IMG/VR virus record: IMGVR_UViG_3300027834_000005
Coordinates: 62,001 to 126,000 of that record
Length of the DNA stretch: 64,000 nt
Reading direction: 5' to 3' (one strand)
The notes under the pieces: model-generated
What the model was told of the DNA's origin: nothing
Database searches by the model: none
Seen by the model: only the letters and a program-made list of their open reading frames with translations
Shown: positions 9,312 to 62,664 of the stretch, piece by piece
Layout: every line of letters begins with the position of its first letter
How positions within the stretch are numbered: position 1 is the stretch's first letter
Position numbers and translations under genes: made by a program

Positions 9312-9312
9312 A

Positions 9313-11380: not shown

Positions 11381-11458
11381 GTATCTCCCTCCCCTTGCAT
11401 TCTTTTTGAAACTACTGTACAATTAACTTCACATTAACAACTCACATAAGATTATCAT

Positions 11459-11842: not shown

Positions 11843-11843
11843 A

Positions 11844-13764: not shown

Positions 13765-13845
13765 GCTAGTAATACTATCCATACTTGCGAAGAAGATAAA
13801 TTTGAGATATACTTGATCTACGGTCATATGGAATTTATACCATGA
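13751..13845 (+). pseudogene. Deleted MORN-class array gene (orphan tag)
   Basis: TCEEDKFEIYLIYGHMEFIP* at 13783-13845 has no in-frame start; ATG 13751 is out of frame. Confidence 0.7.
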
Positions 13846-14285
13846 GTAAGCTAAAATTTATTGAAACGCCAACGTCACAGTACTTCGAAGATGAACTTGG
13901 AAGATTACAAGGTAAGCATATAGAATGGTATGAATTCGAGGACGGATATAAATGCATGAAATCTTTGAGTTTTTACAAAGACGATGAGATGCATGGTCCT
14001 TTCAAACGATGGTTCGAAAATGGTAAACCACAAAGATTCTGTACGTACGTGGAAGATAGACTCGATGGTGAGTACCAGAGATGGCATCGTAACAATAAAA
14101 GAAAGAGACATTGTTTCTATAAGAACACTGTGTTACATGGAGAGTACCAAAGATGGGATGAGGATGGAGAAGTAGAAATTAACAGACTCTATGTTGATGG
14201 TAAAAGATTATCGTGTCCTATACCTACATCCGAAGAAGATAAATTTGAGATATGCCTGAAATATGGACATATGGATTTCATATGA
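13842..14285 (+). CDS. Tag-array protein, MORN-variant class
   Basis: HGPFKRWFENG; TSEEDKFEICLKYG. Confidence 0.85.
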   Translation: MSKLKFIETPTSQYFEDELGRLQGKHIEWYEFEDGYKCMKSLSFYKDDEMHGPFKRWFENGKPQRFCTYVEDRLDGEYQRWHRNNKRKRHCFYKNTVLHGEYQRWDEDGEVEINRLYVDGKRLSCPIPTSEEDKFEICLKYGHMDFI

Positions 14286-14809
14286 AACTAGAAGAGGTCA
14301 GAACTAGAACACGACATTACTACGTTGATGAAGAAGACAATATTCAAGGCGAATATATACGTTACTACGACGATGCCCCATCGGTAATTCGATCCGCATG
14401 CACGTACATAGACGACAAAAAAGAAGGTTTATATGTACATTTCTACAGAAACGGGAAAGTGGATAGCGTAAGTGAGTACGTAAATAATGAAAAGGACGGC
14501 GAGTATGTGTCGTGGCATAAAAATGGCGGTGTTTGTACCAGAACTACGTTCAGGAAAGGCGTGGAGAATGGAGAGTACATGGACTGGCATGCGAACGGTC
14601 AGTTATGGGAACATCTATTCTTTAAGGATGGACGTGAACATGGTGAATCTATAATGATTAAAGAGAATGGCGAGGTAAGGTCACATGCCATATACCTTGA
14701 GGGTAGAGAAACTAAGATACCAATACCAACCACTGAGGAAGATCAATTTCTCCTCTGCCTAGAACACGGTCACATGGATTTCCTACCAATAGGACTGCAT
14801 GACGTATGA
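14282..14809 (+). CDS. Tag-array protein, MORN-variant class
   Basis: GEYMDWHANGQ; TEEDQFLLCLEHG. Confidence 0.85.
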   Translation: MKLEEVRTRTRHYYVDEEDNIQGEYIRYYDDAPSVIRSACTYIDDKKEGLYVHFYRNGKVDSVSEYVNNEKDGEYVSWHKNGGVCTRTTFRKGVENGEYMDWHANGQLWEHLFFKDGREHGESIMIKENGEVRSHAIYLEGRETKIPIPTTEEDQFLLCLEHGHMDFLPIGLHDV

Positions 14810-15348
14810 AACTTAAAGAGATAAAGACACGAACCATACACTACTTCGAAGATGAACTTGGACGAAGACAAGGTGAACTAATTCTTCGTTATGAGGAGAA
14901 ACCATCACAAATTAAATCCATTAATAATTACGTTGATGGTATTAAAGTTGGCACCAGTATAGATTGGTACATGAACGGTAAGATAAGAACCGTGGCCAAC
15001 TACGTGAATGAGCTTAAGGAAGGTAACCACGCTGAATGGCACGAAAGCGGCAATAAACGATCACGTACTTTTTACAAGGACGGTTCAGAGCATGGCGAGT
15101 ACATGGACTGGCATGCGAACGGTCAGTTATGGGAGCACGTATTTCTAATAGATAGTGCAGAAAACGGAGAGTCTATAATTTTCGACATATATGGTAATGT
15201 AACAGACCATGACATTTTTGTTAATGGTACGATAATTGATGTTCCAATCCCTACGTGTGAAGAAGAACAGTTTCTCTTGTGCCTTGAGTATGGACACATG
15301 GAATTCTTTCCTATAGGTATGTATGAACTTACAGCAAGTAAACACTAG
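14806..15348 (+). CDS. Tag-array protein, MORN-variant class
   Basis: Close paralog of previous gene; CEEEQFLLCLEYG. Confidence 0.85.
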   Translation: MKLKEIKTRTIHYFEDELGRRQGELILRYEEKPSQIKSINNYVDGIKVGTSIDWYMNGKIRTVANYVNELKEGNHAEWHESGNKRSRTFYKDGSEHGEYMDWHANGQLWEHVFLIDSAENGESIIFDIYGNVTDHDIFVNGTIIDVPIPTCEEEQFLLCLEYGHMEFFPIGMYELTASKH

Positions 15349-15613
15349 AGAAGAAACGTTCACCGTGGACAGAGATACCGGATGCATGGAAGGTGAATAT
15401 GTTAGCCGGTACAGTGACGGCTCAGTAAATATACACTGCTTCTATAAGAAGCATAAATTACATGGTGAGTTCAAAAGATGGGTGAATAGTATAAAACCAC
15501 TCGTCCATATTATATACATTGATGGGGTCCATTCCGATATCACTCCTCCAGTCACTGAGGAGGAAAGGTTCCTTTTCAAATTACAATACGATCTTCCATT
15601 ATTAGGAGAGTAA
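15323..15613 (+). CDS. Tag-array protein, MORN-variant class
   Basis: LHGEFKRW; VTEEERFLFKLQY. Confidence 0.8.
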   Translation: MNLQQVNTREETFTVDRDTGCMEGEYVSRYSDGSVNIHCFYKKHKLHGEFKRWVNSIKPLVHIIYIDGVHSDITPPVTEEERFLFKLQYDLPLLGE

Positions 15614-15615
15614 AC

Positions 15616-15954
15616 ATGACCCCATCAGAGAAATTAATACGGTCAGCATCCATTGGTGACACGATACTAATTGCCGAAAAGCGTGATTCCGTCACGTGGT
15701 CTGTAGATGAAACTAAGCTAGTGGTACAAGATGTGATTCTGTATGGTGAGAGAACCATAAAATATACGTTCAAGGATAATGACGAAACAGAGAGACTTAC
15801 CATGTCTATTTCTGACTGTGATCTTGAGCGTATATTCCGATCACACGAGCAAGTCATCTTATTAGTTAAGATCATCCCAGAAGACATCATGTTCCAATGT
15901 AAATTGTCAGGTGACTACTCAGACGCTGTGGCGTTCCAAGGCTTTGCTCCGTGA
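15616..15954 (+). CDS. Tag-array protein (PEDxLFQC subfamily)
   Basis: PEDIMFQCKLSGDY. Confidence 0.8.
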   Translation: MTPSEKLIRSASIGDTILIAEKRDSVTWSVDETKLVVQDVILYGERTIKYTFKDNDETERLTMSISDCDLERIFRSHEQVILLVKIIPEDIMFQCKLSGDYSDAVAFQGFAP

Positions 15955-16268
15955 ACAAATTCGAACGCCTAGTTAACAATTTTGAAGCTGGGGATAGATT
16001 ACTAATCCTACGTTCAAGGGAAGGCGTTTGGATTCTGTACGAAGAAGCTACGATAACCAGAGACCCTGATTTTGACTTTAAGTTTAACTTCAAGTATGAT
16101 GGCAATCCAACAATATACAACTCTGATGCATCAGAGCTAGAAGCCATAAACAATGCTGGGTCATTTGCTATGGTATTGAAAAGAGATGTGCCAGAAGAGT
16201 TATTATTTCAATGTGTACTATCTAATACATACGACGAAGTACTAAGGTACTTGGGATATATACAATGA
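15951..16268 (+). CDS. Tag-array protein (PEDxLFQC subfamily)
   Basis: PEELLFQCVLSNTY. Confidence 0.8.
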   Translation: MNKFERLVNNFEAGDRLLILRSREGVWILYEEATITRDPDFDFKFNFKYDGNPTIYNSDASELEAINNAGSFAMVLKRDVPEELLFQCVLSNTYDEVLRYLGYIQ

Positions 16269-16588
16269 ATATGTACATAGAGTTCATCGACATCTTGGTA
16301 GACACTGACACTGTTGTGATCGTACAGGAAAATCACGATAAAACGTGGACTAAAGCTAGTGAACTCATTGTGACATCTGTGAAACGACGTACCAAGCCAT
16401 CTTTTCTATATAGGCTAAATCATGACCATAATGTTTATGAGCTAACATGCAAAGATTTAGCTAGACTAAGTAACTCCAATGATTTTTCATTCGTACTCGA
16501 AAGAGTCATACCTGAAGATGTATTGTTCCAATGCAGACTGTCTGGCAACTACGCAGAAGCAATAAGACACCATGGGTTCACGTCATGA
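16265..16588 (+). CDS. Tag-array protein (PEDxLFQC subfamily)
   Basis: PEDVLFQCRLSGNY. Confidence 0.8.
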   Translation: MNMYIEFIDILVDTDTVVIVQENHDKTWTKASELIVTSVKRRTKPSFLYRLNHDHNVYELTCKDLARLSNSNDFSFVLERVIPEDVLFQCRLSGNYAEAIRHHGFTS

Positions 16589-16938
16589 AATCAGAACTAT
16601 TTTGCTACAGAGATTTCCTATACTCATTGAAAGTGGGAGACAGAATCATGCGTATTCGATACATTCCTGAGAAATTCGAACATGTAGATACGTTAACTAT
16701 TACGCATATATCAACGCCTATAGGTCACACTCCTATATGCTCCTACACCTCCAGTGCTACCGGAGATAAGAGAATCAGGTTGTCAATGGGAAGCTTGGAA
16801 TATATGGAGCGTCAAGAAGGCATATACACTAGGAAGGAAGAAGAAATATTGAAAGGCGTACCTGAAGATATTCTATTTCAATGTGTGTTATCTAATGACT
16901 ACACAGATGCTCTTAAGTATAGGGGGTTCAAGGTATGA
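16585..16938 (+). CDS. Tag-array protein (PEDxLFQC subfamily)
   Basis: PEDILFQCVLSNDY. Confidence 0.8.
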   Translation: MKSELFCYRDFLYSLKVGDRIMRIRYIPEKFEHVDTLTITHISTPIGHTPICSYTSSATGDKRIRLSMGSLEYMERQEGIYTRKEEEILKGVPEDILFQCVLSNDYTDALKYRGFKV

Positions 16939-17255
16939 ATCTATATGAACAGCTCACTCATGACGCAAACACCAATGACATCTTAATAGTCGTACAGAAG
17001 GACAAAGCCAGTGAAGCGTGGACATTAAACCTAGTCGTACGAGTAGTCGTCGCGTCTAAAATGGACTTCGTTAGATTCAAGGCAGACGAATGGACCATAG
17101 GCACAAACGTATCCATTAAGGAATTAGAACAGTACCACGTACATTCTAACCTATGTCTTCTTTTAGAGAAAAACATACCAGAGGACATTCTATTTCATGC
17201 TAGACTGTCTGAAGACTACACTGATGCCGCAAGACTCGCGGGGTATATAGAATGA
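16935..17255 (+). CDS. Tag-array protein (PEDxLFQC subfamily)
   Basis: PEDILFHARLSEDY. Confidence 0.8.
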   Translation: MNLYEQLTHDANTNDILIVVQKDKASEAWTLNLVVRVVVASKMDFVRFKADEWTIGTNVSIKELEQYHVHSNLCLLLEKNIPEDILFHARLSEDYTDAARLAGYIE

Positions 17256-17563
17256 CATATGCATATCATGACATGAAGAAAGGCGATAAGTTCTACTACC
17301 CTGTGGGGTTTGAAGATGTCCCTAAAGAATGGATAGTAACACGTGCATCTAATAGATCCCAACCTATGACTGTGTACCGTGGGGGGACAGGTTCACACCC
17401 CGTGTCTTTAGAAGAGGACACATGGAATAGAACCGTCACGGACGGCGTCATTGTTACGTATGGGCAGATCTTGACAGCAGTAGGAGAAGAGTGTATGTTT
17501 GAACATGAACTGGCTGGCACAGTAACCTCACTGCTCGCGGAGATGAAGAATGACAAGTTTTAA
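17252..17563 (+). CDS. Tag-array protein (GD..Y subfamily)
   Basis: KGDKFYYP; GEECMFEHELAG. Confidence 0.8.
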   Translation: MTYAYHDMKKGDKFYYPVGFEDVPKEWIVTRASNRSQPMTVYRGGTGSHPVSLEEDTWNRTVTDGVIVTYGQILTAVGEECMFEHELAGTVTSLLAEMKNDKF

Positions 17564-17651
17564 TGATGTGAAAGTAGGTGACATTTTGTACTACCCAGTA
17601 GCTGGATCATTAAGTGATCTATTACGGGACATGGGCAATTGGAATGTGTGA
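17550..17651 (+). pseudogene. Internally deleted array gene (33 aa)
   Basis: MTSFNDVKVGDILYYP fused directly to tag tail VAGSLSDLL. Confidence 0.65.
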
Positions 17652-17952
17652 GTATGATGATTTAGAAGTGGGTGATGTATTCTATCATCCCGCAGGCCAT
17701 CCAAGAAAGAAAGCGAATAAGTGGACAATAATCCAACAGAGACGTACAAAGAACCTTGTTGCTATACGTGATGGTAGCGAAGATAAACGCGGAACACAAA
17801 TAAGTAAAACGCAATGGCACATACTGAGTGCACGTAATAGGATTGTCTCACATAAGAAATTACTGAGTGATAACAGCGAAGAAACTATATTCTTACATAC
17901 GCTCGCTGGCACTCTATATGATTTACTGAGTGCATACGGCCCATCAGACTAA
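17644..17952 (+). CDS. Tag-array protein (GD..Y subfamily)
   Basis: VGDVFYHP; SEETIFLHTLAG. Confidence 0.8.
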   Translation: MCEYDDLEVGDVFYHPAGHPRKKANKWTIIQQRRTKNLVAIRDGSEDKRGTQISKTQWHILSARNRIVSHKKLLSDNSEETIFLHTLAGTLYDLLSAYGPSD

Positions 17953-17963
17953 GGTAGATAGTT

Positions 17964-18290
17964 ATGGAAGCATACGTAAAAGCACTACATGGTGCTAAAA
18001 AAGGCGACATTGTTACAGTAGTTGAATACGACGAGGATAACAGATCGTGGGATCTCTTCATAGAGATAAAAATCGTGAGTTTACATACATATCCCATGCG
18101 ATTAGAGTACACGCATGAAGGAATGAGCATCACCAACTACGTTAACCTTGATAATCTACTGAGCACCGGCATAAATGCCATTTTCTTAAGAAGAACTATA
18201 CCGGAAGACATTATATTCCAATGTTCGTTATCAGGCAACTATGTAGAGGCTGTAAAGTACCACGGATACGATACCTATGAAACTGCATAA
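17964..18290 (+). CDS. Tag-array protein (PEDxLFQC subfamily)
   Basis: PEDIIFQCSLSGNY. Confidence 0.8.
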   Translation: MEAYVKALHGAKKGDIVTVVEYDEDNRSWDLFIEIKIVSLHTYPMRLEYTHEGMSITNYVNLDNLLSTGINAIFLRRTIPEDIIFQCSLSGNYVEAVKYHGYDTYETA

Positions 18291-18570
18291 AATAGAGACA
18301 CCTTCATACATCATGTTCGTAGATGAGTATGGAAGGAAACAAGGTACATTTAAAGAATTCTATGAGGATGGACGATTAGAATACATATACAACTATGTAG
18401 ATGATCTTAAGCATGGCGATTATAAAGGATACACAAAGGACGGAGAAATTCTAGTCCATACACTATGTATTAATGGTGAGTTTGTGCATAGGTATCACAT
18501 TAACGGTCCTCTATCAGCCGAAGACAAGTTCGAGCTGTGCCTTAAGCACGGACATTTGGAGTTCCTATAA
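18277..18570 (+). CDS. Tag-array protein, MORN-variant class
   Basis: LSAEDKFELCLKHG. Confidence 0.85.
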   Translation: MKLHKIETPSYIMFVDEYGRKQGTFKEFYEDGRLEYIYNYVDDLKHGDYKGYTKDGEILVHTLCINGEFVHRYHINGPLSAEDKFELCLKHGHLEFL

Positions 18571-18860
18571 TGTTAACTGAACATACGTCTAGTTTTTATA
18601 ACTACTTCACTGATAACCTTGGAAGGAAACAAGGTTTATTCAATACGTACTACGATAATGGCCAAAAAGAACAACATGACTACTTCGTGAATGATAAAAG
18701 ACATGGCGATAGTAAAAGTTACTACACTGGCGGTCAACTACGTACCCACATACTATTCATAAATGGGTCTATGCACCATAGCTACCTATGCGATGGTCCT
18801 CTATCAGCCGAAGACAAGTTCGAGCTGTGCCTTAAGTACGGACATTTGGAGTTCCTATGA
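18570..18860 (+). CDS. Tag-array protein, MORN-variant class
   Basis: LSAEDKFELCLKYG. Confidence 0.85.
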   Translation: MLTEHTSSFYNYFTDNLGRKQGLFNTYYDNGQKEQHDYFVNDKRHGDSKSYYTGGQLRTHILFINGSMHHSYLCDGPLSAEDKFELCLKYGHLEFL

Positions 18861-19150
18861 AACATAAAGATATGCAAGTAGGCGATACCTTCTACCATTA
18901 CGGCATACGCGAGGTAGCTAAATGGAAGATAGACAGCATTAGCGTGATACACGTTATTGTTATAGGTGAAGGTGGTAACCCAGTAACTGTGAGCTTAGGT
19001 AGCTGGGGCGCACTAGTGAGAGAATGTACTATGGTGGCACATAAAGACTTAGTTGAAACCTACGGGGAAGAAGCAGTGTTTGAACATACTTTGTCCGGTA
19101 CAGTTAAAGACCTTTTATCCACATACAAAGAATTATCTAATAGACTATAA
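18857..19150 (+). CDS. Tag-array protein (GD..Y subfamily)
   Basis: VGDTFYHY; GEEAVFEHTLSG. Confidence 0.8.
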   Translation: MKHKDMQVGDTFYHYGIREVAKWKIDSISVIHVIVIGEGGNPVTVSLGSWGALVRECTMVAHKDLVETYGEEAVFEHTLSGTVKDLLSTYKELSNRL

Positions 19151-19206
19151 CATAAACTTATGGTATACTCTCTCATCACACACAGAACACCTACAAGGAT
19201 AGTAAT

Positions 19207-19869
19207 ATGAACGAAGAAACAACAGCCGTAGATACAGAAGCAGCAGAAGATCAAAATGTAACTATGGGACAAAGAGACATCACTACCCATGGCACACTGG
19301 ACAACAGTAAAGCAATGGAGTCTGCAGACGGCGATTGCATATGGATGGTGAGAGATGGCAAGCTAGAAATCATCAAGAAACATGAAGAATACTTCCTATG
19401 TATGTTATTCGATCACGTGAATAAAGCCTATGGCATAACCATTGAGAGAAACCCATGTGAGGGTGCCACTCATAGATTACCTTGCTTACAACAAACCATC
19501 GTTACGTATCCTGATGCCAAGCAAGATGACGGGAGCACAAAGGAAGTGGGATACATTCTGCAGCACTTTACACCGCCTGACACAATGACTGGCATACCTA
19601 ACTTAGAGAACACTGAGTCTCGTAGTAAGATGAAGATCACTATGGCTGATGGTAAAGTCGTTAAGAGCAAGAACCATATGCTCGTGCAACTAGACACAGG
19701 AAAGACTCTTCATGATAAGAAGAAAGCATTCACTAAGAAAGATAAAACCATGCACGTGAATAGACATGGCGTTACGCACTGGTTAGATGATAAACTTGTG
19801 AGACTGTCAGAGGACTTCTTCCGTCTGTACTCTGAAATCCCAGATAGCACAATCACTGAACTAACCTAG
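19207..19869 (+). CDS. Hypothetical protein (untagged, own promoter)
   Basis: 220 aa; RBS AAGGA; upstream TAGACT-N17-TATACT. Confidence 0.8.
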   Translation: MNEETTAVDTEAAEDQNVTMGQRDITTHGTLDNSKAMESADGDCIWMVRDGKLEIIKKHEEYFLCMLFDHVNKAYGITIERNPCEGATHRLPCLQQTIVTYPDAKQDDGSTKEVGYILQHFTPPDTMTGIPNLENTESRSKMKITMADGKVVKSKNHMLVQLDTGKTLHDKKKAFTKKDKTMHVNRHGVTHWLDDKLVRLSEDFFRLYSEIPDSTITELT

Positions 19870-19889
19870 TCCGTTTAAGGAATATTCCT

Positions 19890-20192
19890 GTGAGTACTCT
19901 AACTGAACATAGGTCTCTGACTTATCACTATTTCGGTGATGATGACGGGAATATACATGGTGAATATAAGGGCTGGTGTGATGACGGTACACAAACTGTG
20001 CATGCATTATACGTCCATGGAAAAAGACATGGTGAGTACAAGAGCTGGTATAATGATGGGGATTTAAGCACCCATTGCATATACGTTCATGGAAAAAGAC
20101 ATGATGTGCCTTACATCGATATCTTATCTGATGAAGACAAATTCGAGCTATGTCTCATACATGGACATATGGAGTTCTTACCCAATACATAA
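19890..20192 (+). CDS. Tag-array protein, MORN-variant class
   Basis: HGEYKSWY; LSDEDKFELCLIHG. Confidence 0.85.
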   Translation: MSTLTEHRSLTYHYFGDDDGNIHGEYKGWCDDGTQTVHALYVHGKRHGEYKSWYNDGDLSTHCIYVHGKRHDVPYIDILSDEDKFELCLIHGHMEFLPNT

Positions 20193-20550
20193 CCCACTCT
20201 TTCGTACTTTTTCGTACCTGATTTTATTATATACGGACATTATCTTTGCTAAAACAGGGGTAAAAAGTACGAAATGAGTTTATGTACGAAGACCCTGAGC
20301 GCTCTGTATTGCCATATAAGCCACCCAAATAACATACCAACCCAATGACACCTCTATCCCAGTAACGACGCCACACAGAGCTTATATAAGCATTCCCTTT
20401 GGTACATTAACTTATATATAAGTGCAACGCTTTTTTGCCCAAAACACACCCACTTTTTTTCTTACCCCTCGACGTGCGTGTCTCTCTTGTAAACAAATTG
20501 AAAATAATGTATACTCTCCTACATAAATTACCATTAGTGACGCATATCAA

Positions 20551-20862
20551 ATGAAGCTAACAGAACACATAACAGACACTTGCCACTTCTTTAAAGATGA
20601 AGAAGGAAGAACTCAAGGCGAATACATATCGTGGTATGATGAAGATAAACAGCAATGTAGTTGTCATTGTTTCTATAAGGATGGCAAAGCTCATGGAGAA
20701 TATTTATCCCTGTATTTTGATGGGAATATCGCATCACACCTTATCATCGTAAATGGCATCGGCACTTCTGAATGCCCTGACAATCTCACAGAAGAAGATA
20801 AGTTTGAGATATGTCTAAAGTATGGACATATGAAATTCCTCACTAACAACTGGAATACGTAA
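20551..20862 (+). CDS. Tag-array protein, MORN-variant class
   Basis: LTEEDKFEICLKYG. Confidence 0.85.
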   Translation: MKLTEHITDTCHFFKDEEGRTQGEYISWYDEDKQQCSCHCFYKDGKAHGEYLSLYFDGNIASHLIIVNGIGTSECPDNLTEEDKFEICLKYGHMKFLTNNWNT

Positions 20863-21230
20863 TGGATATCAAAGATATAAAAGTAGGCGATATCATCTAC
20901 TACCAACAACTACCTGGTCGCCCACTAGAAACACACAAGGTAGTAGAACTCCGCATGAACAAAAATAAACCCACTGTATGTGTACGTTACGCAGAAGATG
21001 GAGGACATCGCTCTCTCATCACAGAGAAAGAATATGATGAACTCAGAGAGAACGGTAGACTCATCACAGACAAAGAAGCACGAACTAATTTTTCCGATGA
21101 AGAACTATTCCAAGCTGAGCTAGCAGGAGACACACCACAACTCATTACCAAGTACTTGGAAAACAAAGCCAAAGCATTCGATGCACATCTCATACACAAG
21201 AGCACATTGCCATATGCCCCAGATGAATGA
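20862..21230 (+). CDS. Tag-array protein (GD..Y subfamily)
   Basis: VGDIIYY; SDEELFQAELAGD. Confidence 0.8.
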   Translation: MDIKDIKVGDIIYYQQLPGRPLETHKVVELRMNKNKPTVCVRYAEDGGHRSLITEKEYDELRENGRLITDKEARTNFSDEELFQAELAGDTPQLITKYLENKAKAFDAHLIHKSTLPYAPDE

Positions 21231-21576
21231 TTACTATAGCTTACAAGTGGGAGATGAGTACTACTACCCCATAGGACACCACCCACTAAAAATCAACACG
21301 TGGACCGTAGAACAGATACCAACGTCCCCACAAGGAGGCACTACATACGTGAGAAGAGATTTCGATAAGGTACGGTCTGCCATATCTCTACCCAACTGGA
21401 TGTCTCTAGTGGCAAAAGGAAACATCGTCACAAAGAAATACCTCATAGATATGGTGGGGGAAGAAGAACTCTTTCAACACATACTAGCCGACACTCTTAA
21501 AGACCTACTACTCATAGCGAAGATACAGATGATAGAGGAAGGCAAGGATACGATACGTAAAGGAATAATGAGATGA
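21223..21576 (+). CDS. Tag-array protein (GD..Y subfamily)
   Basis: VGDEYYYP; GEEELFQHILAD. Confidence 0.8.
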   Translation: MNDYYSLQVGDEYYYPIGHHPLKINTWTVEQIPTSPQGGTTYVRRDFDKVRSAISLPNWMSLVAKGNIVTKKYLIDMVGEEELFQHILADTLKDLLLIAKIQMIEEGKDTIRKGIMR

Positions 21577-21878
21577 CCAAGCACATACCCGATAAAGACT
21601 CATCTCTATATGGCGTGCAAGAGGGAGACAAATACTACTCCATAAGAGAACATGAAGCCAACCTATGGATTGTACACACCGTACGACAAAGACATATATG
21701 CATAACTAATGAAGGCGATGACAAACTAACCCTCACTAAAGATAGCTGGTATACGCTCATAGCAACACAAATCATGGTAGCACATGAAGACTTAATACAT
21801 GCGTACGGAGAAGAAGCACTCTTCCAACACCTACTAGCTGATACCCTATTAGAACTACTAACTCTATATACTGATTAA
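21573..21878 (+). CDS. Tag-array protein (GD..Y subfamily)
   Basis: EGDKYY; GEEALFQHLLAD. Confidence 0.8.
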   Translation: MTKHIPDKDSSLYGVQEGDKYYSIREHEANLWIVHTVRQRHICITNEGDDKLTLTKDSWYTLIATQIMVAHEDLIHAYGEEALFQHLLADTLLELLTLYTD

Positions 21879-21889
21879 TAGGCAAGAAG

Positions 21890-22186
21890 ATGAATCTAAC
21901 TGAACATAACACTCCAAGTAGAAGTCCATGCTTCCACGACGAGAATAGAAACAAACAAGGTCTGTATTCGCGTACTTTTTTCACAGGAAAGGAAGCCGCA
22001 CGAGTATTCTACCTTGATAACTATGAACATGGTGAAGTGAAGCGCTGGTGCGTTAACGGAGATGTACTTGAACATGCCATCTATGTACGTGGGCACGTAG
22101 TTAAAGACCTCATGAACGACATACTCACTGATGAAGATAAGTTCCTACTGTGCCTAGAACATGGACACATGGAATTCTTATCATAA
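21890..22186 (+). CDS. Tag-array protein, MORN-variant class
   Basis: LTDEDKFLLCLEHG. Confidence 0.85.
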   Translation: MNLTEHNTPSRSPCFHDENRNKQGLYSRTFFTGKEAARVFYLDNYEHGEVKRWCVNGDVLEHAIYVRGHVVKDLMNDILTDEDKFLLCLEHGHMEFLS

Positions 22187-55652: not shown

Positions 55653-55725
55653 AACCCTCGGTAAACCCTTGGTGAACCCTTGGTAAACCCTTGGGCGACG
55701 TAGTCGCTACCCTCGGTAAACCTTG
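55653..55725. repeat. 11-bp direct repeats (island right boundary)
   Basis: aaccctcggta aacccttggtg aacccttggta aacccttgggc, preceded by C-runs and A/T tracts. Confidence 0.7.
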
Positions 55726-56387
55726 TACATGATCCTGTGCTTATGTTCTATCCACTCACACAACTCTTCTGCCGACACATTAGGGGGTGGGAGTGACCAC
55801 GCTTTCCGTGTTCCTGACGTCGCAGCCCCAAAGGGCAGCTCTGTTAGTGGTGGGGCAAGCGTTCCGACTCCTCGACTCGACACTCCTAGCGGCACTTTAG
55901 TGGATACTTTAGTGGATACTTTAGTGGATACTTTAGTGGATACACTAGAGGAAAAGTCACCACTATGATTAGTTATGGTGGGAATGTAGGGTGCATAGTA
56001 GAACCCACTGTCAGAATCACGTTGGGGGATATACTTCCGATCCATGTAGACCCCCAGATATAGCCCTGTGAAGGCCCTGACGCGATCTTTTGGATCATAG
56101 AGTATATCGGTTAGGATTTCATCCTCTTCGCCTCCTAGCTCGTGCTGGAACTGTGTGGGGCCATCTACTATCCCTGTGACGGAACTATAGAAGTCACCCA
56201 CAACAGAACCCCATAAATTTACTTGTATGTCTATGTCGTGGAGTTTAGATGTATTGAGGAAATGATAGAACATGTCTCCGGCAGCATTTCTAAAGCATAT
56301 GTGACGGTTGTAGTAGACTTTATGCAGTTCCATGCCTATTGAATGAATCATGTTTTTTGATCGCATCATGTTTTTTGATTGCATCAT
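55707..56387 (-). CDS. Hypothetical protein with repeat expansions
   Basis: STKV x4 (12-bp repeat 55894-55941); DSGFYYAPYIP motif. Confidence 0.55.
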   Translation of the reverse strand: MMQSKNMMRSKNMIHSIGMELHKVYYNRHICFRNAAGDMFYHFLNTSKLHDIDIQVNLWGSVVGDFYSSVTGIVDGPTQFQHELGGEEDEILTDILYDPKDRVRAFTGLYLGVYMDRKYIPQRDSDSGFYYAPYIPTITNHSGDFSSSVSTKVSTKVSTKVSTKVPLGVSSRGVGTLAPPLTELPFGAATSGTRKAWSLPPPNVSAEELCEWIEHKHRIMYKVYRG

Positions 56388-56830
56388 GTTTTTATGTTCT
56401 CGCGTAATAGTCTTTCCACTGTTCGAGTGTCTACTAGCGCACCGTATACTGCGATGCAGGATGGTGGCATACTGCATGCAGTGGCGTAGTTTCTAGTGTC
56501 TTCGTATTTATGAAGGAAGTGGTAGAATGCCACTCCCTGTCTTTCACTCTTGAGTTCATCGAATTCATAATCGTCAAATGCGTCCAATCCTTCTCCGCTC
56601 AGTTCGTAGTTGAATTGATCTTCACGGCTAAACTCTACCATACGGACGGTATAAAATTCTTCGCCGATATTAATTCCGAAAGTAGAATTCTTTTTCTTCT
56701 TTTCGGAATGCATATAGGCAAGTGAGAATGAATGCGCATAGTGGATGAATTTTTCTCCATCCTGTCTTGCAATAGAAAAATGATTTCTATATCCAAATGG
56801 GTATACTTTATGAAATGAATAATTATGCAC
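56384..56830 (-). CDS. Tag-bearing protein
   Basis: SREDQFNYELSG. Confidence 0.7.
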   Translation of the reverse strand: MHNYSFHKVYPFGYRNHFSIARQDGEKFIHYAHSFSLAYMHSEKKKKNSTFGINIGEEFYTVRMVEFSREDQFNYELSGEGLDAFDDYEFDELKSERQGVAFYHFLHKYEDTRNYATACSMPPSCIAVYGALVDTRTVERLLRENIKT

Positions 56831-57215
56831 GGATACTGTATCCTCTATCTAAAAACCTTGGTGGTTTAATGCCAAAAAATGTGCTTTCTCTTCCGTATTT
56901 GAAATAGTACCGTGGTTTAGCTTCTGGGTGTTTTTTCTTTATTTGTTGTATCATGGACCAGAACCCATGGCCATAATATACAAAACCATCGCACCCTACC
57001 GGCGTACCTGATAATTTTCTTTCGAACTCTTCTTCTACGGAGAGCACCATGAGATCCACTACCCATACTTCTTTACCGATGCATTGTCCAAAATAGGTTG
57101 GTTGAGTACCGCTAGGCTTGGGTCTAATATGAGTGATGCCTTGTATGTGATAGAAATTACCATCGTCGTCTGTGACAATTATATATGCTTCTGTAACTAT
57201 TGATTGCAGTTTCAT
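56823..57215 (-). CDS. Tag-bearing protein
   Basis: SVEEEFERKLSG. Confidence 0.7.
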   Translation of the reverse strand: MKLQSIVTEAYIIVTDDDGNFYHIQGITHIRPKPSGTQPTYFGQCIGKEVWVVDLMVLSVEEEFERKLSGTPVGCDGFVYYGHGFWSMIQQIKKKHPEAKPRYYFKYGRESTFFGIKPPRFLDRGYSIRA

Positions 57216-57709
57216 ACTGATTGTTCCTGAAAATATTCTGATGCGAATGGGTTTGCCCCAAATACTCCGCGAATAGTGCGTGTTACAGTATTATCTTCTC
57301 CGTATTCAGAATGTATAAATTTTCTGAATACTTCAATACTATGCCATACGACTATGCCTTCTCCGTCCTGACTATGGTCCCAGTATTCATCGTCTCGGTA
57401 TGCCTCAGTGAGCCGGTCTAGGAAAAATTCTTCCACGGTAACTACTTTCAATATGAATGCGTGTCCGTGTTCCTTAGTAATTAAGGTATGTAGTGGGCAA
57501 CCGTATACGACTTCTGTGGTTGTTGGGTTACTAGTTTCTGGATAGACTATTCTACAGTGTTTGATATCTAGGTTGATACTCCACTGATAGAGATATACAA
57601 TTTCTGGGCGTGTAGAGTCCATGACGGCGTAAAAGCTTTTTCTTTCGAATATACTTTTACCTGCTAACCTTTGGGCGTTCTGGCTCTGTAGCGTGGTGTA
57701 TTTTAGCAT
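57212..57709 (-). CDS. Tag-bearing protein (weak)
   Basis: TVEEFFLDRLT. Confidence 0.65.
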   Translation of the reverse strand: MLKYTTLQSQNAQRLAGKSIFERKSFYAVMDSTRPEIVYLYQWSINLDIKHCRIVYPETSNPTTTEVVYGCPLHTLITKEHGHAFILKVVTVEEFFLDRLTEAYRDDEYWDHSQDGEGIVVWHSIEVFRKFIHSEYGEDNTVTRTIRGVFGANPFASEYFQEQSV

Positions 57710-57783
57710 GTGTATGCCCTATATTAATAGTATTATATACTATTATTTTGAAGTTTACTATAGTCTTATAGGATTTTTCGGCT

Positions 57784-58083
57784 TTATAGTTTCAGATTTT
57801 GAGGTTGCCACTTCAGGCTCATGCACCGGATCTGCAGCGCGGCTCTTATGATTCGATACGGCCAACCTAACAGGATTGTCAACGGAAAGAACATTATATG
57901 GTCGTCTAGGTGTTCGCTTCCGTGTGTGATTTCCATTATGAGTTCGGTTATGCAATACGCCATAACGAAGGTGAAGTACGCTAAAAGCGCAATAAAAAGA
58001 ATAGCCCCTAGGTGTGAACTTCCGTTAACAGTCACAGTACATGCTTCTATAGTACATCTTGCAGTAGATTCAATGCCGAGCAT
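57784..58083 (-). CDS. Small 2-TM protein
   Basis: Tandem paralog family; start uncertain. Confidence 0.55.
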   Translation of the reverse strand: MLGIESTARCTIEACTVTVNGSSHLGAILFIALLAYFTFVMAYCITELIMEITHGSEHLDDHIMFFPLTILLGWPYRIIRAALQIRCMSLKWQPQNLKL

Positions 58084-58268
58084 GAGGTTCTCCTTCTAAA
58101 TAATATCCCAATGAATAGGTATAGTGGACAAATAAACTTCTCAGTGAACCCTCTGAAGTTATCATAGTTCCACCCAAAATGCTCATATATGACTATGGCC
58201 CACGTTATGTTAGCTACTAAGTACATTCCTACCATATAGACGAATGTCACATATAATAAAGTGTTCAT
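58047..58268 (-). CDS. Small 2-TM protein
   Basis: HFGWNY motif. Confidence 0.65.
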   Translation of the reverse strand: MNTLLYVTFVYMVGMYLVANITWAIVIYEHFGWNYDNFRGFTEKFICPLYLFIGILFRRRTSCSALNLLQDVL

Positions 58269-58471
58269 AGCACATTACTCCATATATTGGGCACATTCTT
58301 TTCCCTAAGTACGAATCGTATAACACGGAAAGGTAACAGTGTGATCTTATCGAATATTCCGTCAGGCTCGTAGTTCCACCCATATGCATACACAGCAATC
58401 AATGAACATATAATTGCCATGAACGAGTAGGAAGTGCCCAATATAATTACAGAAAGTATAATACCCATCAT
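58265..58471 (-). CDS. Small 2-TM protein
   Basis: AYGWNY..LPFRVI. Confidence 0.65.
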   Translation of the reverse strand: MMGIILSVIILGTSYSFMAIICSLIAVYAYGWNYEPDGIFDKITLLPFRVIRFVLREKNVPNIWSNVL

Positions 58472-58689
58472 CTCTCACACCGATTCCATCGCACGGGCAT
58501 TGTCCTCTTACGAAAAACAACAGCCAGAATTCTATAAGGGATAAGGAACGCAGAATCCCATATATCTTCATTCTGGAAATCCCATCCGTACACCTCTACT
58601 GTGGAGACGGTATACGCGAACGAAAAAATTACATACACCCCAATAGAGATGAACATCCAGAACTGCGTGGCACTTATAGGGTCTATCAT
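58468..58689 (-). CDS. Small 2-TM protein
   Basis: VYGWDF..IPYRIL. Confidence 0.65.
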   Translation of the reverse strand: MIDPISATQFWMFISIGVYVIFSFAYTVSTVEVYGWDFQNEDIWDSAFLIPYRILAVVFRKRTMPVRWNRCER

Positions 58690-58729
58690 GTTTATATTCC
58701 TATATCAATAAGACTATACTACCATAAAT

Positions 58730-59269
58730 TCAAGATTTCATATAGTACTTAGCATGGATATCTGTCCACGTATTTCTATTTGCGTTTAACTTATTATGGG
58801 CCGCAACTATATTAGCGTATGGATTATGGGGAACAGGATAGTAATCGCCTGCCATAGAGAAGTATACGAGTGAACTTTTAAACGTTCTGTTACTTCCTCC
58901 AAATAAAGGTAGATGGTATACCCCTACATTTTCAGACTCCACTTCAGCTAGTAATAAGAATATATCTTCGTGGAGAGTACCCATCAATGAAGACATGAAA
59001 TATTCAGTCGTTTCCATGGTCACTTTCTTCCCCTCGCATATGGTTCCGGTGAGAGAGCCGAAACACGGGGTGATATTTTCTTCAGTTGTTTTCACTAAGT
59101 ATGACGGTAGCTTAACGACACAGACGTACTCAACTGAGTCCTCTTCATAGAAATGAAGATATAAGTCTTCTGTTATTAGGCCGATAAACGAACCCACGCC
59201 ACGTTTATTGACAGGATTAGTTTTAATTCGATTTTCATACTTACTTATTTTTTGATACTGGAATGTCAT
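58730..59269 (-). CDS. Tag-bearing protein (weak)
   Basis: ETTEYFMSSLMG; paralog of next gene (FGS..G). Confidence 0.7.
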   Translation of the reverse strand: MTFQYQKISKYENRIKTNPVNKRGVGSFIGLITEDLYLHFYEEDSVEYVCVVKLPSYLVKTTEENITPCFGSLTGTICEGKKVTMETTEYFMSSLMGTLHEDIFLLLAEVESENVGVYHLPLFGGSNRTFKSSLVYFSMAGDYYPVPHNPYANIVAAHNKLNANRNTWTDIHAKYYMKS

Positions 59270-59697
59270 GTGTAGTGCCTACCGAATCCGTATTCTCTTG
59301 CTGCGCTATCATAGTTACAGAAATCTATATAACTTTGGTATGAACATGGTGATTTATATTCGTATGGTCCATCATTCATATATAAGTACATTTCATAATA
59401 CGCGCCTACCTTAGCACGCGACGTTTTACTTCTGTATTGATTTACAGTTCCTCTAAGCTTAGCCTCGAAAAATTCATCCTCCGGTACTTCTGCGCTATGA
59501 ACTGCAATAACGGGTCCAACAAAAGAACCAAACACGGTGATATTACTTTCTTTCTCCTTTCTATCGAGTATAGTATCTAGCATTCGTCCTAGGTCATAAC
59601 CACCGCAGAAATATAATATATAACTATCCCTACTAGTGGGTATCTCAATCACGTATCTATCGTCTTTATCGAGGACAACTTTATTCTTTATAGTCAT
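59266..59697 (-). CDS. Tag-bearing protein
   Basis: PEDEFFEAKLRG. Confidence 0.75.
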   Translation of the reverse strand: MTIKNKVVLDKDDRYVIEIPTSRDSYILYFCGGYDLGRMLDTILDRKEKESNITVFGSFVGPVIAVHSAEVPEDEFFEAKLRGTVNQYRSKTSRAKVGAYYEMYLYMNDGPYEYKSPCSYQSYIDFCNYDSAAREYGFGRHYT

Positions 59698-60974: not shown

Positions 60975-61026
60975 ATGGCACCATAATGTTTTATATTCCG
61001 CATTATAGCACCATTTGTAGTTAGTG

Positions 61027-62664
61027 TCAAATTACTTTGGTTATGAAAACCATAGCGTAATTGTTCAGATCGTCAATGCCGATGGTATGACTGTGGGTAT
61101 GAGTTACGTTATGCGTATGCGTGCCATCTGAACTTATACCATGGTCATGTGATGATCCACTACCTGTAGATCCAGAAGTAGAACTTGCTCCGGTCTGACC
61201 CTCATAAGGTTCAGATATTGTCCCGCCGCCCACACCACTATATGCACCAACTGCATGTGTATGTGCTGGCATTTCGCTAATAGATAATACATGTCCCGCT
61301 GTGTCACCACCATGGGAATGATTACCGGCGCTAGTAGAGGTCATAGTGTCAGTGGAACTTAACGTGATTGATGGTGAGCCATTTGCTCCCACATCGCCGT
61401 CGTCATCTACGCCCTTAATGAATCGATTAACTAGGTTAGGGGTCTTAATGTCTCCGGTGCCATTGGCAACTAAAATACCATTAGTGTAGGTGTCACCATT
61501 GCATAACTTCCAACCGCTAGGGATAGTAACGATATTACCATTCCACATCATTGTCATGCCCACAGGGAAGAAATCCATGTACGATGCTTTTTCTATAGCG
61601 CCATCATCCTTAACAATTACCACTTTGTCAGTGGCTGGTGTCAATGAACCATTAGGTAAATTATCAACGCCACTTTCGAACACAGTTGTGCCTATAGTGT
61701 CGGATACCGTAAATGTTTGGTTTGGACTTTCATTAAGACTAGTAACATATAATTGGTTTACATGTACACTTGCTAATCTTTTGGTCGTAGATCCTATACC
61801 TGTTCCACTATCTGACTCAGGTACAATATAAGTTCCGCCGATAAGATTAATGTCGTTGTTTCCGTCTCCGCCTAAATTAGATACGTTTGCCGTTTCCACA
61901 GTGATTGCGTTGAATGGCGTAGCCGCGTTACCAAGATTTACTTGGTTGCCGCTTTCACTAATAGGAACGATAGAGGATACATTATTCTCTACGATTTCCT
62001 TAAGGATTACATTTCTACCTTCGCCAAATCTCAACTCTTCGGCAAATACAGATTTAATAGGGTTGTCATATTCACCTAAGTCAATAAAACTTCCGCTCTC
62101 AGCTGTTATTTTAGAAACGTTACCAGTAGATGATTTGGAGTTTGACAGTACCGTGTTACCGTCTATAGACAAAGCAGGGATACCATCTGGATCAGATACG
62201 CCTACTTGACCGGCATATCTGTTCGTGTTCAATGTTAAATGAGTAACGAAAGCTTCATGCCAGTACAATGAATCAGTGCCGATATTCTGTTCTGAATCTC
62301 TCGCAGGAACCAGCGACTGCGTAGTTGATTCTTGCGCAACTAAAGTCCATCCGTAAGTAGGACTAGAGACCTCTGAATTATACACTTTAAGTCTTTCTAC
62401 GGATGTATCAAACCATAGCTGTCCGGTAACTGGTGTTACTGGTGCCGGTGATGTATCGTCATTGTTATTAAAGTTTACAAAAGGATTACTTTCTGGAGGA
62501 AGATCAGACGCGTAATTTTCTGATAACTGAAATAAAGATTGCGCCACAGAGGACCCATAATCTTCGACGTCACGACCTAATAGACTAGTACTATAGATTC
62601 TGTTTATTTCAGAATCTTGCACCGGAACAGAAAGTCCGTTAGATTTCTTAAATGTAAGAGACAT
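61027..62664 (-). CDS. Tail fibre/baseplate protein with tail-collar domain
   Basis: N-term LSENYA..PVTGQLWFDT; FPVGMTMMWNG..IPSGWKLCNG..TPNLVNRFIKG; His-repeat tip. Confidence 0.8.
   Translation of the reverse strand: MSLTFKKSNGLSVPVQDSEINRIYSTSLLGRDVEDYGSSVAQSLFQLSENYASDLPPESNPFVNFNNNDDTSPAPVTPVTGQLWFDTSVERLKVYNSEVSSPTYGWTLVAQESTTQSLVPARDSEQNIGTDSLYWHEAFVTHLTLNTNRYAGQVGVSDPDGIPALSIDGNTVLSNSKSSTGNVSKITAESGSFIDLGEYDNPIKSVFAEELRFGEGRNVILKEIVENNVSSIVPISESGNQVNLGNAATPFNAITVETANVSNLGGDGNNDINLIGGTYIVPESDSGTGIGSTTKRLASVHVNQLYVTSLNESPNQTFTVSDTIGTTVFESGVDNLPNGSLTPATDKVVIVKDDGAIEKASYMDFFPVGMTMMWNGNIVTIPSGWKLCNGDTYTNGILVANGTGDIKTPNLVNRFIKGVDDDGDVGANGSPSITLSSTDTMTSTSAGNHSHGGDTAGHVLSISEMPAHTHAVGAYSGVGGGTISEPYEGQTGASSTSGSTGSGSSHDHGISSDGTHTHNVTHTHSHTIGIDDLNNYAMVFITKVI

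What the first reader, a model, noticed from the sequence alone, without database searches (positions are those of the whole stretch)
56384..59697. The same tag recurs in a second, oppositely oriented cluster on the far side of the early island
Seen: SREDQFNYELSG, SVEEEFERKLSG and PEDEFFEAKLRG, plus weaker matches in two more genes (five - strand genes in all). Here the motif is internal rather than terminal, and the scaffolds are new. Both tagged clusters point toward the island. Inference: the tag is portable and genome-wide, and does not need to be at the extreme C-terminus, which argues for a docking helix rather than a C-terminal degron.
Basis: partly seen in the sequence, partly recalled or inferred. 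Interest (0 to 1): 0.6.

Follow-up and report, generated by a model that had tools for sequence, protein, structure and literature searches.

The report
Shared helix motif in jumbo-phage genes
Five or six small genes on the minus strand of an uncultured marine jumbo phage carry the same 13-residue helix motif as roughly 130 other genes of that phage, so they are divergent members of one huge phage-specific protein family; the motif looks like a built-in helix, not a loose tail or a degradation tag.

Summary
The three quoted peptides are present in minus-strand genes 56384-56830, 56823-57215 and 59266-59697. A scoring matrix trained elsewhere in the genome gives them 13.8, 18.5 and 23.6 bits. 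All but one of 74 early-island control ORFs score 4.0 or less, and the exception scores 11.9. A strict pattern hits 3 of 15 local minus-strand ORFs against 0.005 expected. Of the two weaker genes, 57212-57709 is marginal (7.6 bits, p about 0.007). 58730-59269 is supported only by alignment with its neighbour. A sixth weak member lies at 55707-56333.

The motif is h-[T/S/P]-[E/D]-E-[D/E]-x-F-x-x-x-L-x-G. It occurs in about 100-134 of about 590 ORFs of a 347-kb phage related to PA5oct, and it is selected at the protein level. It reads as a capped amphipathic helix. In a confident model (pLDDT 92) it is a helix inside a folded domain: an SH3-like barrel followed by helices.

In the minus-strand cluster 60-69 residues follow the motif, against a median of about 11. 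This arrangement is conserved in a syntenic relative. A C-terminal degron is excluded. A docking function is neither shown nor excluded. The family has no Pfam, PHROG or named relatives.

The parts
59266..59697 (-). Gene of 143 aa, the strongest minus-strand carrier. The motif VPEDEFFEAKLRG is at aa 71-83 (nt 59449-59487) and 60 residues follow it.
   Evidence: PSSM 23.6 bits. HMM 14.2 bits, above all island controls and all shuffles. AF2 gives helix 73-82 at pLDDT 80-84, but the rest of the model is below 50. 27-28% identical to the positional counterpart L010:7002-7496. No Pfam or PHROG hit, and only itself in the word search.
58730..59269 (-). Gene of 179 aa, a degenerate member. METTEYFMSSLMG is at aa 85-97 (nt 58979-59017): F...L.G is kept and the acidic part is lost.
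   Evidence: Not significant by PSSM (-6.2 bits). Reciprocal best in-genome phmmer hit of 59266-59697 (E 0.05). Shares N-I-T-x-x-F-G upstream of the motif.
57784..58689 (-). Four small ORFs (99, 73, 68 and 73 aa) lying between the motif genes. Three are paralogous membrane-like proteins that share G-W-[ND]-[YF]. None carries the motif.
   Evidence: Translations. PSSM scores -4 to -12. JGI calls genes of 73, 73 and 99 aa here.
57212..57709 (-). Gene of 165 aa, a marginal member. VTVEEFFLDRLTE is at aa 90-102 (nt 57404-57442) and 63 residues follow it.
   Evidence: PSSM 7.6 bits, shuffle p about 0.007. No HMM hit. Weak phmmer link to 56384-56830 (E 0.11-0.24).
56823..57215 (-). Gene of 130 aa. 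LSVEEEFERKLSG is at aa 58-70 (nt 57006-57044) and 60 residues follow it.
   Evidence: PSSM 18.5 bits, with no shuffle reaching that score. Matches the strict pattern. Fails the flank-containing HMM (-1.3 bits). Reciprocal best hit with 56384-56830 (E 0.002-0.004).
56384..56830 (-). Gene of 148 aa with a GTG start. FSREDQFNYELSG is at aa 67-79 (nt 56594-56632) and 69 residues follow it.
   Evidence: PSSM 13.8 bits, p about 0.0009. HMM 7.8 bits, p about 0.001. Called as a 148-aa gene by JGI.
55707..56333 (-). Sixth, weak member, just outside the reported range. The start is uncertain: 56333, 56387 or 56477. VDGPTQFQHELGG is at nt 56130-56168. A perfect 4 x STKV repeat lies at nt 55894-55943.
   Evidence: phmmer hit from 56384-56830 at E 0.008. 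HMM 4.6 bits, p about 0.004, above all island controls. Tandem repeat found.
61002..61030 (-). Perfect sigma-70 consensus promoter (TTGACA-17-TATAAT with a TG extension) at the head of the minus-strand small-gene cluster. It lies against the stop of the tail-fibre gene 61027-62664, overlapping it by about 4 nt. A second perfect one is at 60489-60517.
   Evidence: A near-consensus promoter sits at the same place in the relative, L010:3659-3687.
299..22186 (+). The plus-strand reference cluster. 46 of 51 ORFs carry the motif, and the cluster continues upstream of the window.
   Evidence: MORN_2 hits. The model of 18857-19150 has pLDDT 92.4.

Best explanation
The minus-strand genes at 55.7-59.7 kb are highly diverged members of one phage-specific superfamily of small, mostly acidic proteins. 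The family has about 100-134 members, roughly a fifth of the genes of this 347-kb marine phage, which is related to PA5oct.

The only part of these proteins that stays recognisable is a 13-residue block: h-[T/S/P]-[E/D]-E-[D/E]-x-F-x-x-x-L-x-G. The block is a self-contained amphipathic helix. It has a hydrophobic residue just before an S/T/P N-cap, three acidic residues in the first turn, F and L one turn apart, and a glycine stop. A second helix usually follows.

The helix is part of the folded protein. It follows directly on a beta strand, a helix or a MORN hairpin. It most likely packs F and L against the variable beta-rich body, acting as the constant closing element of an otherwise free-to-vary binder domain.

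In the minus-strand subfamily a further 60-70 residues were added after it, so the helix is internal. The cluster is its own operon behind a consensus sigma-70 promoter, so it is probably transcribed early by host polymerase.

Shown here: presence, significance, protein-level selection, helix prediction, family size, synteny and conservation in a relative. Inferred: burial of F and L, early timing, and the role of the family as host-directed binders.
For: - Motif statistics.
- Family size and distribution.
- Protein-level selection. All six Leu codons and both Phe codons are used at genome-like frequencies, and third codon positions are mostly uninformative; the one exception is a GAA excess at position 3.
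- Conservation is a sharply bounded island at positions 0-12, with no linker. Position 0 is hydrophobic in 91% of members, and positions -8 to -3 are 44-62% hydrophobic.
- AF2 model of 18857-19150: pLDDT 92.4, pTM 0.79. It has four strands, a helix and a short strand, then helices 62-69, 71-80 (the motif) and 83-96. ESM Atlas's own model of the same protein has pTM 0.71.
- Only residues 1-65 match known SH3-like barrels such as TraI TSA, Tudor, PWWP and FeoA, at Z 4-6.4.
- The motif is helical at pLDDT 80-84 even in the otherwise poor model of 59266-59697.
- Neighbouring minus-strand genes are each other's best in-genome hits.
- hhalign links the minus-strand family to plus-strand families through the motif, with or without the preceding hairpin.
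- The relative L010 has the same layout: tail fibres, promoter, homologues of 60393 and 60071, internal-motif genes of 143 and 164 aa, short-tag genes, then a convergent DUF932 gene.
Against:
- F is kept in about 95% of members, L in about 85% and E at position 3 in about 81%, in proteins that are otherwise 20% identical or less. That is more residue-specific than a purely structural helix normally needs and hints at a shared ligand.
- With the motif masked, no similarity among the five genes reaches E 1e-3. Common descent of the whole proteins is therefore not proven, and a shuffled module remains possible.
- The model of a minus-strand member is unreliable outside the helix.
- No expression data exist: no RNA run holds the region.
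Confidence: 0.55

Rival explanations
1. One reading: the helix is a portable docking module. It attaches many different small binder domains to one common hub, which could be a host or phage protein such as a polymerase, a protease/unfoldase adaptor or a scaffold. This would resemble the F-box or PRANC boxes of large eukaryotic viruses. The helix could still be part of the fold.
For: - The same 13-residue block follows MORN_2 repeats, SH3-like barrels and the unrelated-looking minus-strand proteins.
- F, L and the acidic triplet are conserved in a residue-specific way across about 130 paralogues, and also in 11 foreign metagenomic proteins and in L010, while everything else has diverged.
- Position relative to the C-terminus is free.
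Against: - No partner is known or predicted.
- There is no flexible linker.
- Every conserved feature is also a generic helix start or stop signal.
- In the confident model the helix lies between two other helices at pLDDT about 95.
- The self-association test gave no verdict and counts neither way.
Confidence: 0.3
2. The motif is a C-terminal degron or other terminal signal. In the minus-strand genes it would be a decayed remnant without function.
For: In most family members the motif lies within about 25 residues of the C-terminus.
Against: - Only 10 of 134 instances end the protein, and the distance to the end varies from 0 to 129 residues.
- The motif is predicted helical and folded, not a free tail.
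- The internal arrangement, with about 58-75 residues after the motif, is conserved in the relative L010.
Confidence: 0.03
3. The motif marks a processing or packaging site. The residues h-x-E resemble the (L/I)-x-E sites cut by T4-type prohead proteases (from general knowledge), and this phage has a T4-like portal.
For: - Position 0 is L, I, V or M and position 2 is E or D in most instances.
- The portal is T4 gp20-like.
- The minus-strand cluster lies next to tail-fibre genes.
Against: - About 130 small proteins is far too many for head cargo.
- The clusters sit behind sigma-70-type promoters next to a promoter-dense early region.
- The conserved F...L.G lies downstream of the putative cut and would have no role.
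- PA5oct, the nearest isolate, whose record annotates structural proteins by ESI-MS/MS, lacks the family.
Confidence: 0.04
4. The minus-strand matches are chance, or they reflect a DNA- or RNA-level element rather than a protein motif.
For: Two of the five genes are not individually significant. The HMM misses 56823-57215. One island control reaches 11.9 bits.
Against: - Three exact pattern matches in 15 ORFs against 0.005 expected.
- Synonymous codons vary freely within the motif.
- The frames agree with independent gene calls.
- The motif is conserved in the syntenic relative.
Confidence: 0.02

Closest known systems
Multigene families of large viruses that share one terminal box, such as poxvirus ankyrin-PRANC/F-box-like proteins and pandoravirus MORN-repeat, ankyrin and F-box expansions. 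These are known to me from general knowledge. PMC6418002 surfaced but was not read.
   Same: There are many paralogues, with variable repeat or beta-rich binder domains and one short constant helical element at or near an end. Here too one of the scaffolds is MORN repeats.
   Different: Those boxes are 40-50-residue domains with a known hub (Skp1/cullin) in eukaryotic hosts. Here the constant element is 13-30 residues, the host is a bacterium, no hub is known, and no Pfam box domain is detected.
Generic helix start and stop signals: hydrophobic staple, S/T capping box, acidic first turn and glycine C-cap (textbook protein structure).
   Same: The motif has a hydrophobic residue at position 0, T/S/P at 1, E/D-E-D/E at 2-4, and G at 12. 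It is predicted helical.
   Different: These generic signals do not explain the near-invariant F at position 6 and L at position 10 across about 130 paralogues.
SH3-like small barrels followed by C-terminal helices, such as PWWP and Tudor domains, the TraI translocation-signal domain, FeoA and the CarD/UvrD RNA-polymerase-interacting domains.
   Same: The body of the modelled plus-strand member (residues 1-65) superposes on them at Z 4.3-6.4 and Foldseek E 0.03-0.1.
   Different: The scores are in the range of common arrangements. The helical part that carries the motif is not matched. No sequence relationship exists. The fold of the minus-strand members is unknown.
MORN_2 repeat proteins (PF07661, YwqK-like).
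   Same: About 23 family members have MORN_2 repeats in front of the motif. The profile weakly hits the SET7/9 MORN region.
   Different: The five minus-strand genes have no MORN_2 hit. The C-terminal helix is not part of the Pfam repeat.
14-3-3 proteins, the helix pair around ...GESKVFYYKMKGDYHRY...
   Same: There is local sequence resemblance to the motif plus 'GDY' (profile A5, E 0.002 against PDB sequences). Both are helix-Gly-helix corners.
   Different: 14-3-3 is all-helical and about 240 aa long. The rest of the alignment is spurious. The motif-only profile finds nothing in the PDB. I treat this as convergence.

Membership tests
This phage's unnamed 'E-E-D-x-F-x-x-x-L-x-G helix' family | A 13-residue motif scoring above background with a model trained on other members. 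| tested here: met
   Met for 59266-59697 (23.6 bits), 56823-57215 (18.5) and 56384-56830 (13.8). Marginal for 57212-57709 (7.6). Not met for 58730-59269.
This phage's unnamed 'E-E-D-x-F-x-x-x-L-x-G helix' family | The motif forms an alpha helix. | tested here: met
   Helix 73-82 at pLDDT 80-84 in 59266-59697. Helix 71-80 at pLDDT about 95 in 18857-19150.
This phage's unnamed 'E-E-D-x-F-x-x-x-L-x-G helix' family | The motif lies within about 0-50 residues of the C-terminus of a protein of about 95-150 aa. | tested here: not met
   60-69 residues follow the motif in the minus-strand genes. This is the extreme tail of the distribution and defines a subfamily that is also seen in L010.
This phage's unnamed 'E-E-D-x-F-x-x-x-L-x-G helix' family | Homology beyond the motif to other members. 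| tested here: inconclusive
   hhalign aligns 36 columns (E 1.1e-3, probability 20%) with the DGSLP subfamily and 19 columns with the SH3-type family. Nothing is found at 1e-3 when the motif is masked.
MORN_2 repeat proteins (PF07661) | Pfam MORN_2 repeats above the gathering score. | tested here: not met
   No Pfam family for any of the five genes at E 0.1 or better. Plus-strand members such as 10093-10671 do match.
SH3-like barrel plus helices (fold of 18857-19150) | A five-stranded small barrel before the motif helix. | tested here: inconclusive
   The model of 59266-59697 has pLDDT below 50 outside the motif, so the fold cannot be judged.
C-terminal degron (ssrA-like tail) | An unstructured signal at the extreme C-terminus. 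| tested here: not met
   The motif is internal in the minus-strand genes and lies at a variable distance from the end elsewhere. It is predicted helical and folded.
Short linear docking motif | The motif lies in a flexible or disordered region and binds a defined partner. | tested here: inconclusive
   No linker is seen, and the motif is part of the fold in one model. The partner is unknown, and binding cannot be tested with these tools.
T4-type capsid-targeting or prohead-protease substrates | An N-terminal targeting sequence and cleavage after (L/I)-x-E in virion proteins. | not testable with these tools
   The sequence partly fits h-x-E. The location is not N-terminal, and no proteomics exist for this lineage.
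14-3-3 | An all-helical fold of about 240 aa with homology over the whole domain. | tested here: not met
   Only about 17 residues are similar. The model is a beta barrel plus helices.

The most novel reading that the evidence does not exclude
A bacteriophage devotes about a fifth of its genes to one adaptor system. More than 100 small binder proteins with different scaffolds (MORN repeats, SH3-like barrels, and the extended minus-strand type) would all plug, through the same 13-residue acidic F/L helix, into a single host or phage hub. This would be the bacterial-virus counterpart of the F-box/PRANC adaptor families of giant eukaryotic viruses.
Probability: 0.2. Interest if true: 0.85.

Novelty: new variant of a known kind. 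Interest (0 to 1): 0.5.

Why it matters
Large phages carry hundreds of small orphan genes that resist annotation. Here one sharply bounded helix motif ties about 100-134 of them into a single family, including an oppositely oriented cluster with a different layout. That gives a handle for studying them together.

If the helix is only structural, the family is an example of extreme diversification of small binder domains around a constant folding element. If it docks to a hub, one interaction would explain a fifth of a jumbo phage's genes and would point to a central host-takeover or anti-defence node.

The family has no Pfam, PHROG or named relatives, and it was found only in a few marine metagenome contigs.

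Tried and rejected
**Searches that found nothing**
- Near-identity DNA search of 56-60 kb against isolate phages: no match.
- tblastn of 1634-2155 and of 60393-60974 against isolate phages: no match.
- Word-based protein search with 59266-59697 and with 20551-20862: only the query itself.
- Pfam and PHROGs on the five genes and on 31 plus-strand members: no recurrent family.
- ESM Atlas feature search: no usable or named hit.
- IMG/VR scans with the MORN+tag family, the DUF932 neighbour (single protein and alignment) and the 206-kb subfamily: pattern matches but no confirmed relative.
- The metagenome scan returned only the source contig and one 2-kb fragment.
- PA5oct has no HMM match.
- Paper searches on jumbo phages with MORN repeats, paralogues or family expansion found nothing relevant.

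**Hits judged spurious or uninformative**
- Six long repetitive proteins in the big profile search are sums of weak repeat matches.
- 14-3-3 hits are a local resemblance only. The motif-only profile finds nothing in the PDB.

**Readings rejected**
- A DNA-level or ribosome-binding-site-like reading of the GAA-rich motif, rejected on codon usage.

**Tests without a usable result**
- Homodimer prediction for 18857-19150: no verdict (score 0.30, mark 0.42). This is evidence neither for nor against binding.
- The AF2 model of 59266-59697 is too poor (pLDDT 50.6) for a fold search.
- Read laying was not used. The only run that holds the region is a DNA contig set from what is probably the source sample.

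Full report
**Context.** The window is bases 62001-126000 of a 347,232-bp viral record that CheckV estimates to be 94% complete. The same sequence sits in a 410-kb JGI marine metagenome contig and in a Logan assembly. The portal protein is 59.6% identical to that of Pseudomonas phage PA5oct and its relatives, and 45-48% identical to those of Atu_ph07 and Vibrio jumbo phages. So this is an uncultured marine jumbo phage with a T4-like core. GC content is about 40%.

**The motif and its reference set.** In the plus-strand block at 0.3-22.2 kb, 46 of 51 ORFs carry one motif near the C-terminus. I refined it on 86 instances outside 55-61 kb. Position 0 is L/I/V/M. Position 1 is T/S/P. Position 2 is E/D, position 3 is E, and position 4 is D/E. 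Position 5 is K/L/I. Position 6 is F in 82 of 86. Position 10 is L in 79 of 86. Position 11 is S/K/T and position 12 is G/Y/H. The total information is about 22 bits.

- Genome-wide, 134 of about 590 ORFs score 9 bits or more with this 13-mer.
- An HMM built only from 45 window instances finds 101 six-frame places at E 1 or better in this genome and none in PA5oct.
- The instances lie at genome coordinates 1.8-84 kb and 206-273 kb, all on the plus strand, except for three on the minus strand at window 56.4-59.7 kb.
- Inside the motif, synonymous codons are used as in the rest of the genome. All six Leu codons appear, and TTT/TTC is 42/58. The constraint therefore acts on the protein, not on DNA or RNA.

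**Check of the observation.** The three quoted peptides are present in minus-strand ORFs 56384-56830, 56823-57215 and 59266-59697.

| Gene | PSSM (bits) | HMM (bits) |
|---|---|---|
| 59266-59697 | 23.6 | 14.2 |
| 56823-57215 | 18.5 | -1.3 |
| 56384-56830 | 13.8 | 7.8 |
| 57212-57709 | 7.6 (p about 0.007) | no hit |
| 58730-59269 | not significant | -0.9 |
| 55707 ORF | 2.6 | 4.6 |
| 74 early-island ORFs (controls) | one at 11.9, the rest 4.0 or less | maximum 2.3 |

- For the PSSM, shuffled short proteins have a 99th percentile of 6.9 bits and a 99.9th of 13.0 bits.
- The island control at 11.9 bits is a membrane protein with VTREDLFHWLLEL and no glycine.
- The HMM misses 56823-57215 because a 13-residue match whose flanks differ cannot pay HMMER's local-alignment cost.
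- A model-free pattern, [ED][ED].F...L.G, matches 31 ORFs against 0.375 expected. It matches 3 of the 15 local minus-strand ORFs against 0.0054 expected.
- 58730-59269 (METTEYFMSSLMG) is not significant alone, but it is the reciprocal best in-genome hit of 59266-59697. 56823 and 56384 are likewise each other's best hits (E 0.002-0.004). 56384 also hits the next ORF, 55707-56477 (E 0.008), which carries VDGPTQFQHELGG.

The motif is internal here, with 60-69 residues following it against a median of about 11.

**What the motif is.** Read against textbook helix signals, the block has a hydrophobic staple residue, an S/T/P N-cap, an acidic first turn, F and L one turn apart, and a glycine stop. 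Weak hydrophobic periodicity follows at +14, +17 and +18, which suggests a second helix.

Conservation is a sharply bounded island. Positions -30 to -1 carry 0.5 bit or less each. There is no linker: position 0 is hydrophobic in 91% of members, and positions -8 to -3 look like a strand.

AlphaFold2 on the 97-aa member 18857-19150, using 31 paralogues as the alignment, gives pLDDT 92.4 and pTM 0.79. The model has four strands, a helix and a short strand, then helices 62-69, 71-80 (the motif) and 83-96. ESM Atlas's own single-sequence model of the same protein is also confident, at pTM 0.71.

Fold searches match only residues 1-65, to SH3-like small barrels such as the TraI translocation-signal domain, Tudor, PWWP, FeoA, the MscS beta domain and CarD/UvrD Tudor domains. 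Z is 4.3-6.4 and Foldseek E is 0.03 or worse, which is the range of common arrangements. The helical part has no match.

About 23 other members have MORN_2 repeats in front of the motif. For 59266-59697 the model is poor (pLDDT 50.6), but the motif is a helix at pLDDT 80-84.

**Are the minus-strand scaffolds new?**
- With the motif masked, nothing links the five genes to anything at E 1e-3.
- Profile-profile comparison of the minus-strand family (with two L010 counterparts) against the plus-strand 'DGSLP' subfamily aligns 36 columns, covering the preceding F-G hairpin and the motif (E 1.1e-3, probability 20%).
- Against the SH3-type family it aligns only the 19 motif columns (E 1.1e-4, probability 57%).

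The shared element is thus 19-36 residues long. Homology of the remainder is neither shown nor excluded.

**Relatives.** A profile search of 1.84 billion representative proteins returned 50 hits. Of these, 33 are this phage's own paralogues, 6 are long repeat proteins that are spurious, and 11 are small unnamed proteins from short metagenome contigs. All 11 have the motif.

One of them lies on L010, a 15.8-kb contig that is syntenic with the minus-strand region. In order, L010 carries:
- two tail-fibre genes (31-33% identity to 61027-62664);
- a near-consensus sigma-70 promoter;
- a 2OG-Fe(II) oxygenase;
- homologues of 60393-60974 (43%) and 60071-60415 (40%);
- small genes that include a 143-aa protein with LKREEYFLHTLSD (58 residues after the motif) and a 164-aa protein with IPSADYFAHTLMG (75 residues after);
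- seven short genes with near-terminal motifs;
- a convergent DUF932 gene (64% identity to 54117-55172).

The 164-aa protein aligns with 59266-59697 at 27-28% identity, including N-x-ITVFG, the motif, and C-terminal C...Y...C and ARE[YV]. So both the cluster and the internal-motif layout are conserved in a distant relative, while the acidic part of the motif is looser there than F...L.G. No relative was found in IMG/VR or among isolate phages.

**Regulation.** Two perfect TTGACA-17-TATAAT promoters lie on the minus strand, at 61002-61030 and at 60489-60517. The first sits against the stop of the tail-fibre gene, overlapping it by about 4 nt. The 22-54 kb island has about 35 near-consensus promoters on the plus strand. 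The minus-strand cluster therefore looks like a separate operon read by host polymerase. It converges on the island's last gene (DUF932, with a terminator at 55193-55214). Early timing is an inference, since no RNA data exist.

**Mechanism.** A C-terminal degron is excluded by the variable and internal position and by the folded helical state. A DNA- or RNA-level element is excluded by codon usage. Chance is excluded for three genes.

Two readings remain between which I cannot decide fully.
- *Integral structural helix.* I favour this at about 0.55. The helix closes small variable binder domains. Supporting points are the absence of a linker, the ideal helix start and stop signals, and its place between packed helices in the confident model.
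- *Shared docking surface.* I put this at about 0.3. Supporting points are the near-invariance of F, L and E across paralogues that are 20% identical or less, the use of at least two scaffold types, and conservation in relatives.

The two are not exclusive. A homodimer prediction gave no verdict and is not evidence either way.

**Comparison and novelty.** The nearest analogies are the multigene adaptor families of large eukaryotic viruses, which combine variable repeats with one constant helical box. No such box is detected here, and no hub is known. The family has no Pfam, PHROG or named relatives. A local resemblance to the 14-3-3 segment GESKVFYYKMKGDYHRY (E 0.002 against PDB sequences) is best read as convergence of a helix-Gly-helix corner.

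I rate the finding as a real and statistically solid extension of an unusual phage-specific family (a new variant of a known kind). Its functional interpretation remains open.

Noticed in passing
window 57784-58689 (-): Three or four small hydrophobic ORFs (99, 73, 68 and 73 aa) are interleaved with the motif genes. Three of them share G-W-[ND]-[YF] followed by a basic stretch (F/V-R-x-K/R). They look like tandem paralogous membrane proteins.
   Followed up: partly
window 55894-55943, 56339-56393 and 55653-55694: A perfect 12-bp x 4.2 repeat encodes STKV x 4 inside the 55707 ORF. An 18-bp x 3.1 repeat (KNMMQS-like) lies where the 55707 ORF overlaps the end of 56384-56830. An 11-bp x 3.8 repeat lies in the intergenic gap beyond the cluster.
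   Followed up: no
window 22372-53951 (+): About 35 near-consensus sigma-70 promoters (TTGACA, 16-17 nt, TAT[A/T]AT), almost one per gene, in the 'early island'. The motif clusters have only a few.
   Followed up: partly
window 54117-55172 (+): A DUF932 protein (Pfam E 4e-21), 64% identical to its counterpart in the relative L010. It is the best-conserved gene of the neighbourhood and a useful synteny anchor.
   Followed up: partly
window 63461-64000 (-), continuing to genome 125461-137460: A giant minus-strand ORF of 3999 aa begins beyond the window end, downstream of tail-fibre-like genes (61027-62664 has a Collar domain; 62666-63343 matches phrog_11259).
   Followed up: no
window 7701-8072, 11455-11868, 12034-12414 and 13183-13629: Longest-ORF picking chose minus-strand ORFs at these places. 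The six-frame HMM finds plus-strand motif places there instead (for example genome 69759-69827, 73708-73752, 74003-74080 and 75352-75842). The plus-strand array is therefore probably uninterrupted.
   Followed up: partly
window 33697-34056 (+): The only island ORF with a motif-like score (VTREDLFHWLLEL, 11.9 bits). It has a transmembrane segment and no glycine stop, so it is probably a chance helix.
   Followed up: partly
L010:3717-4244: The relative has a 2OG-Fe(II) oxygenase gene between the tail fibres and the small-gene cluster. This gene is absent at the same place in the window.
   Followed up: no
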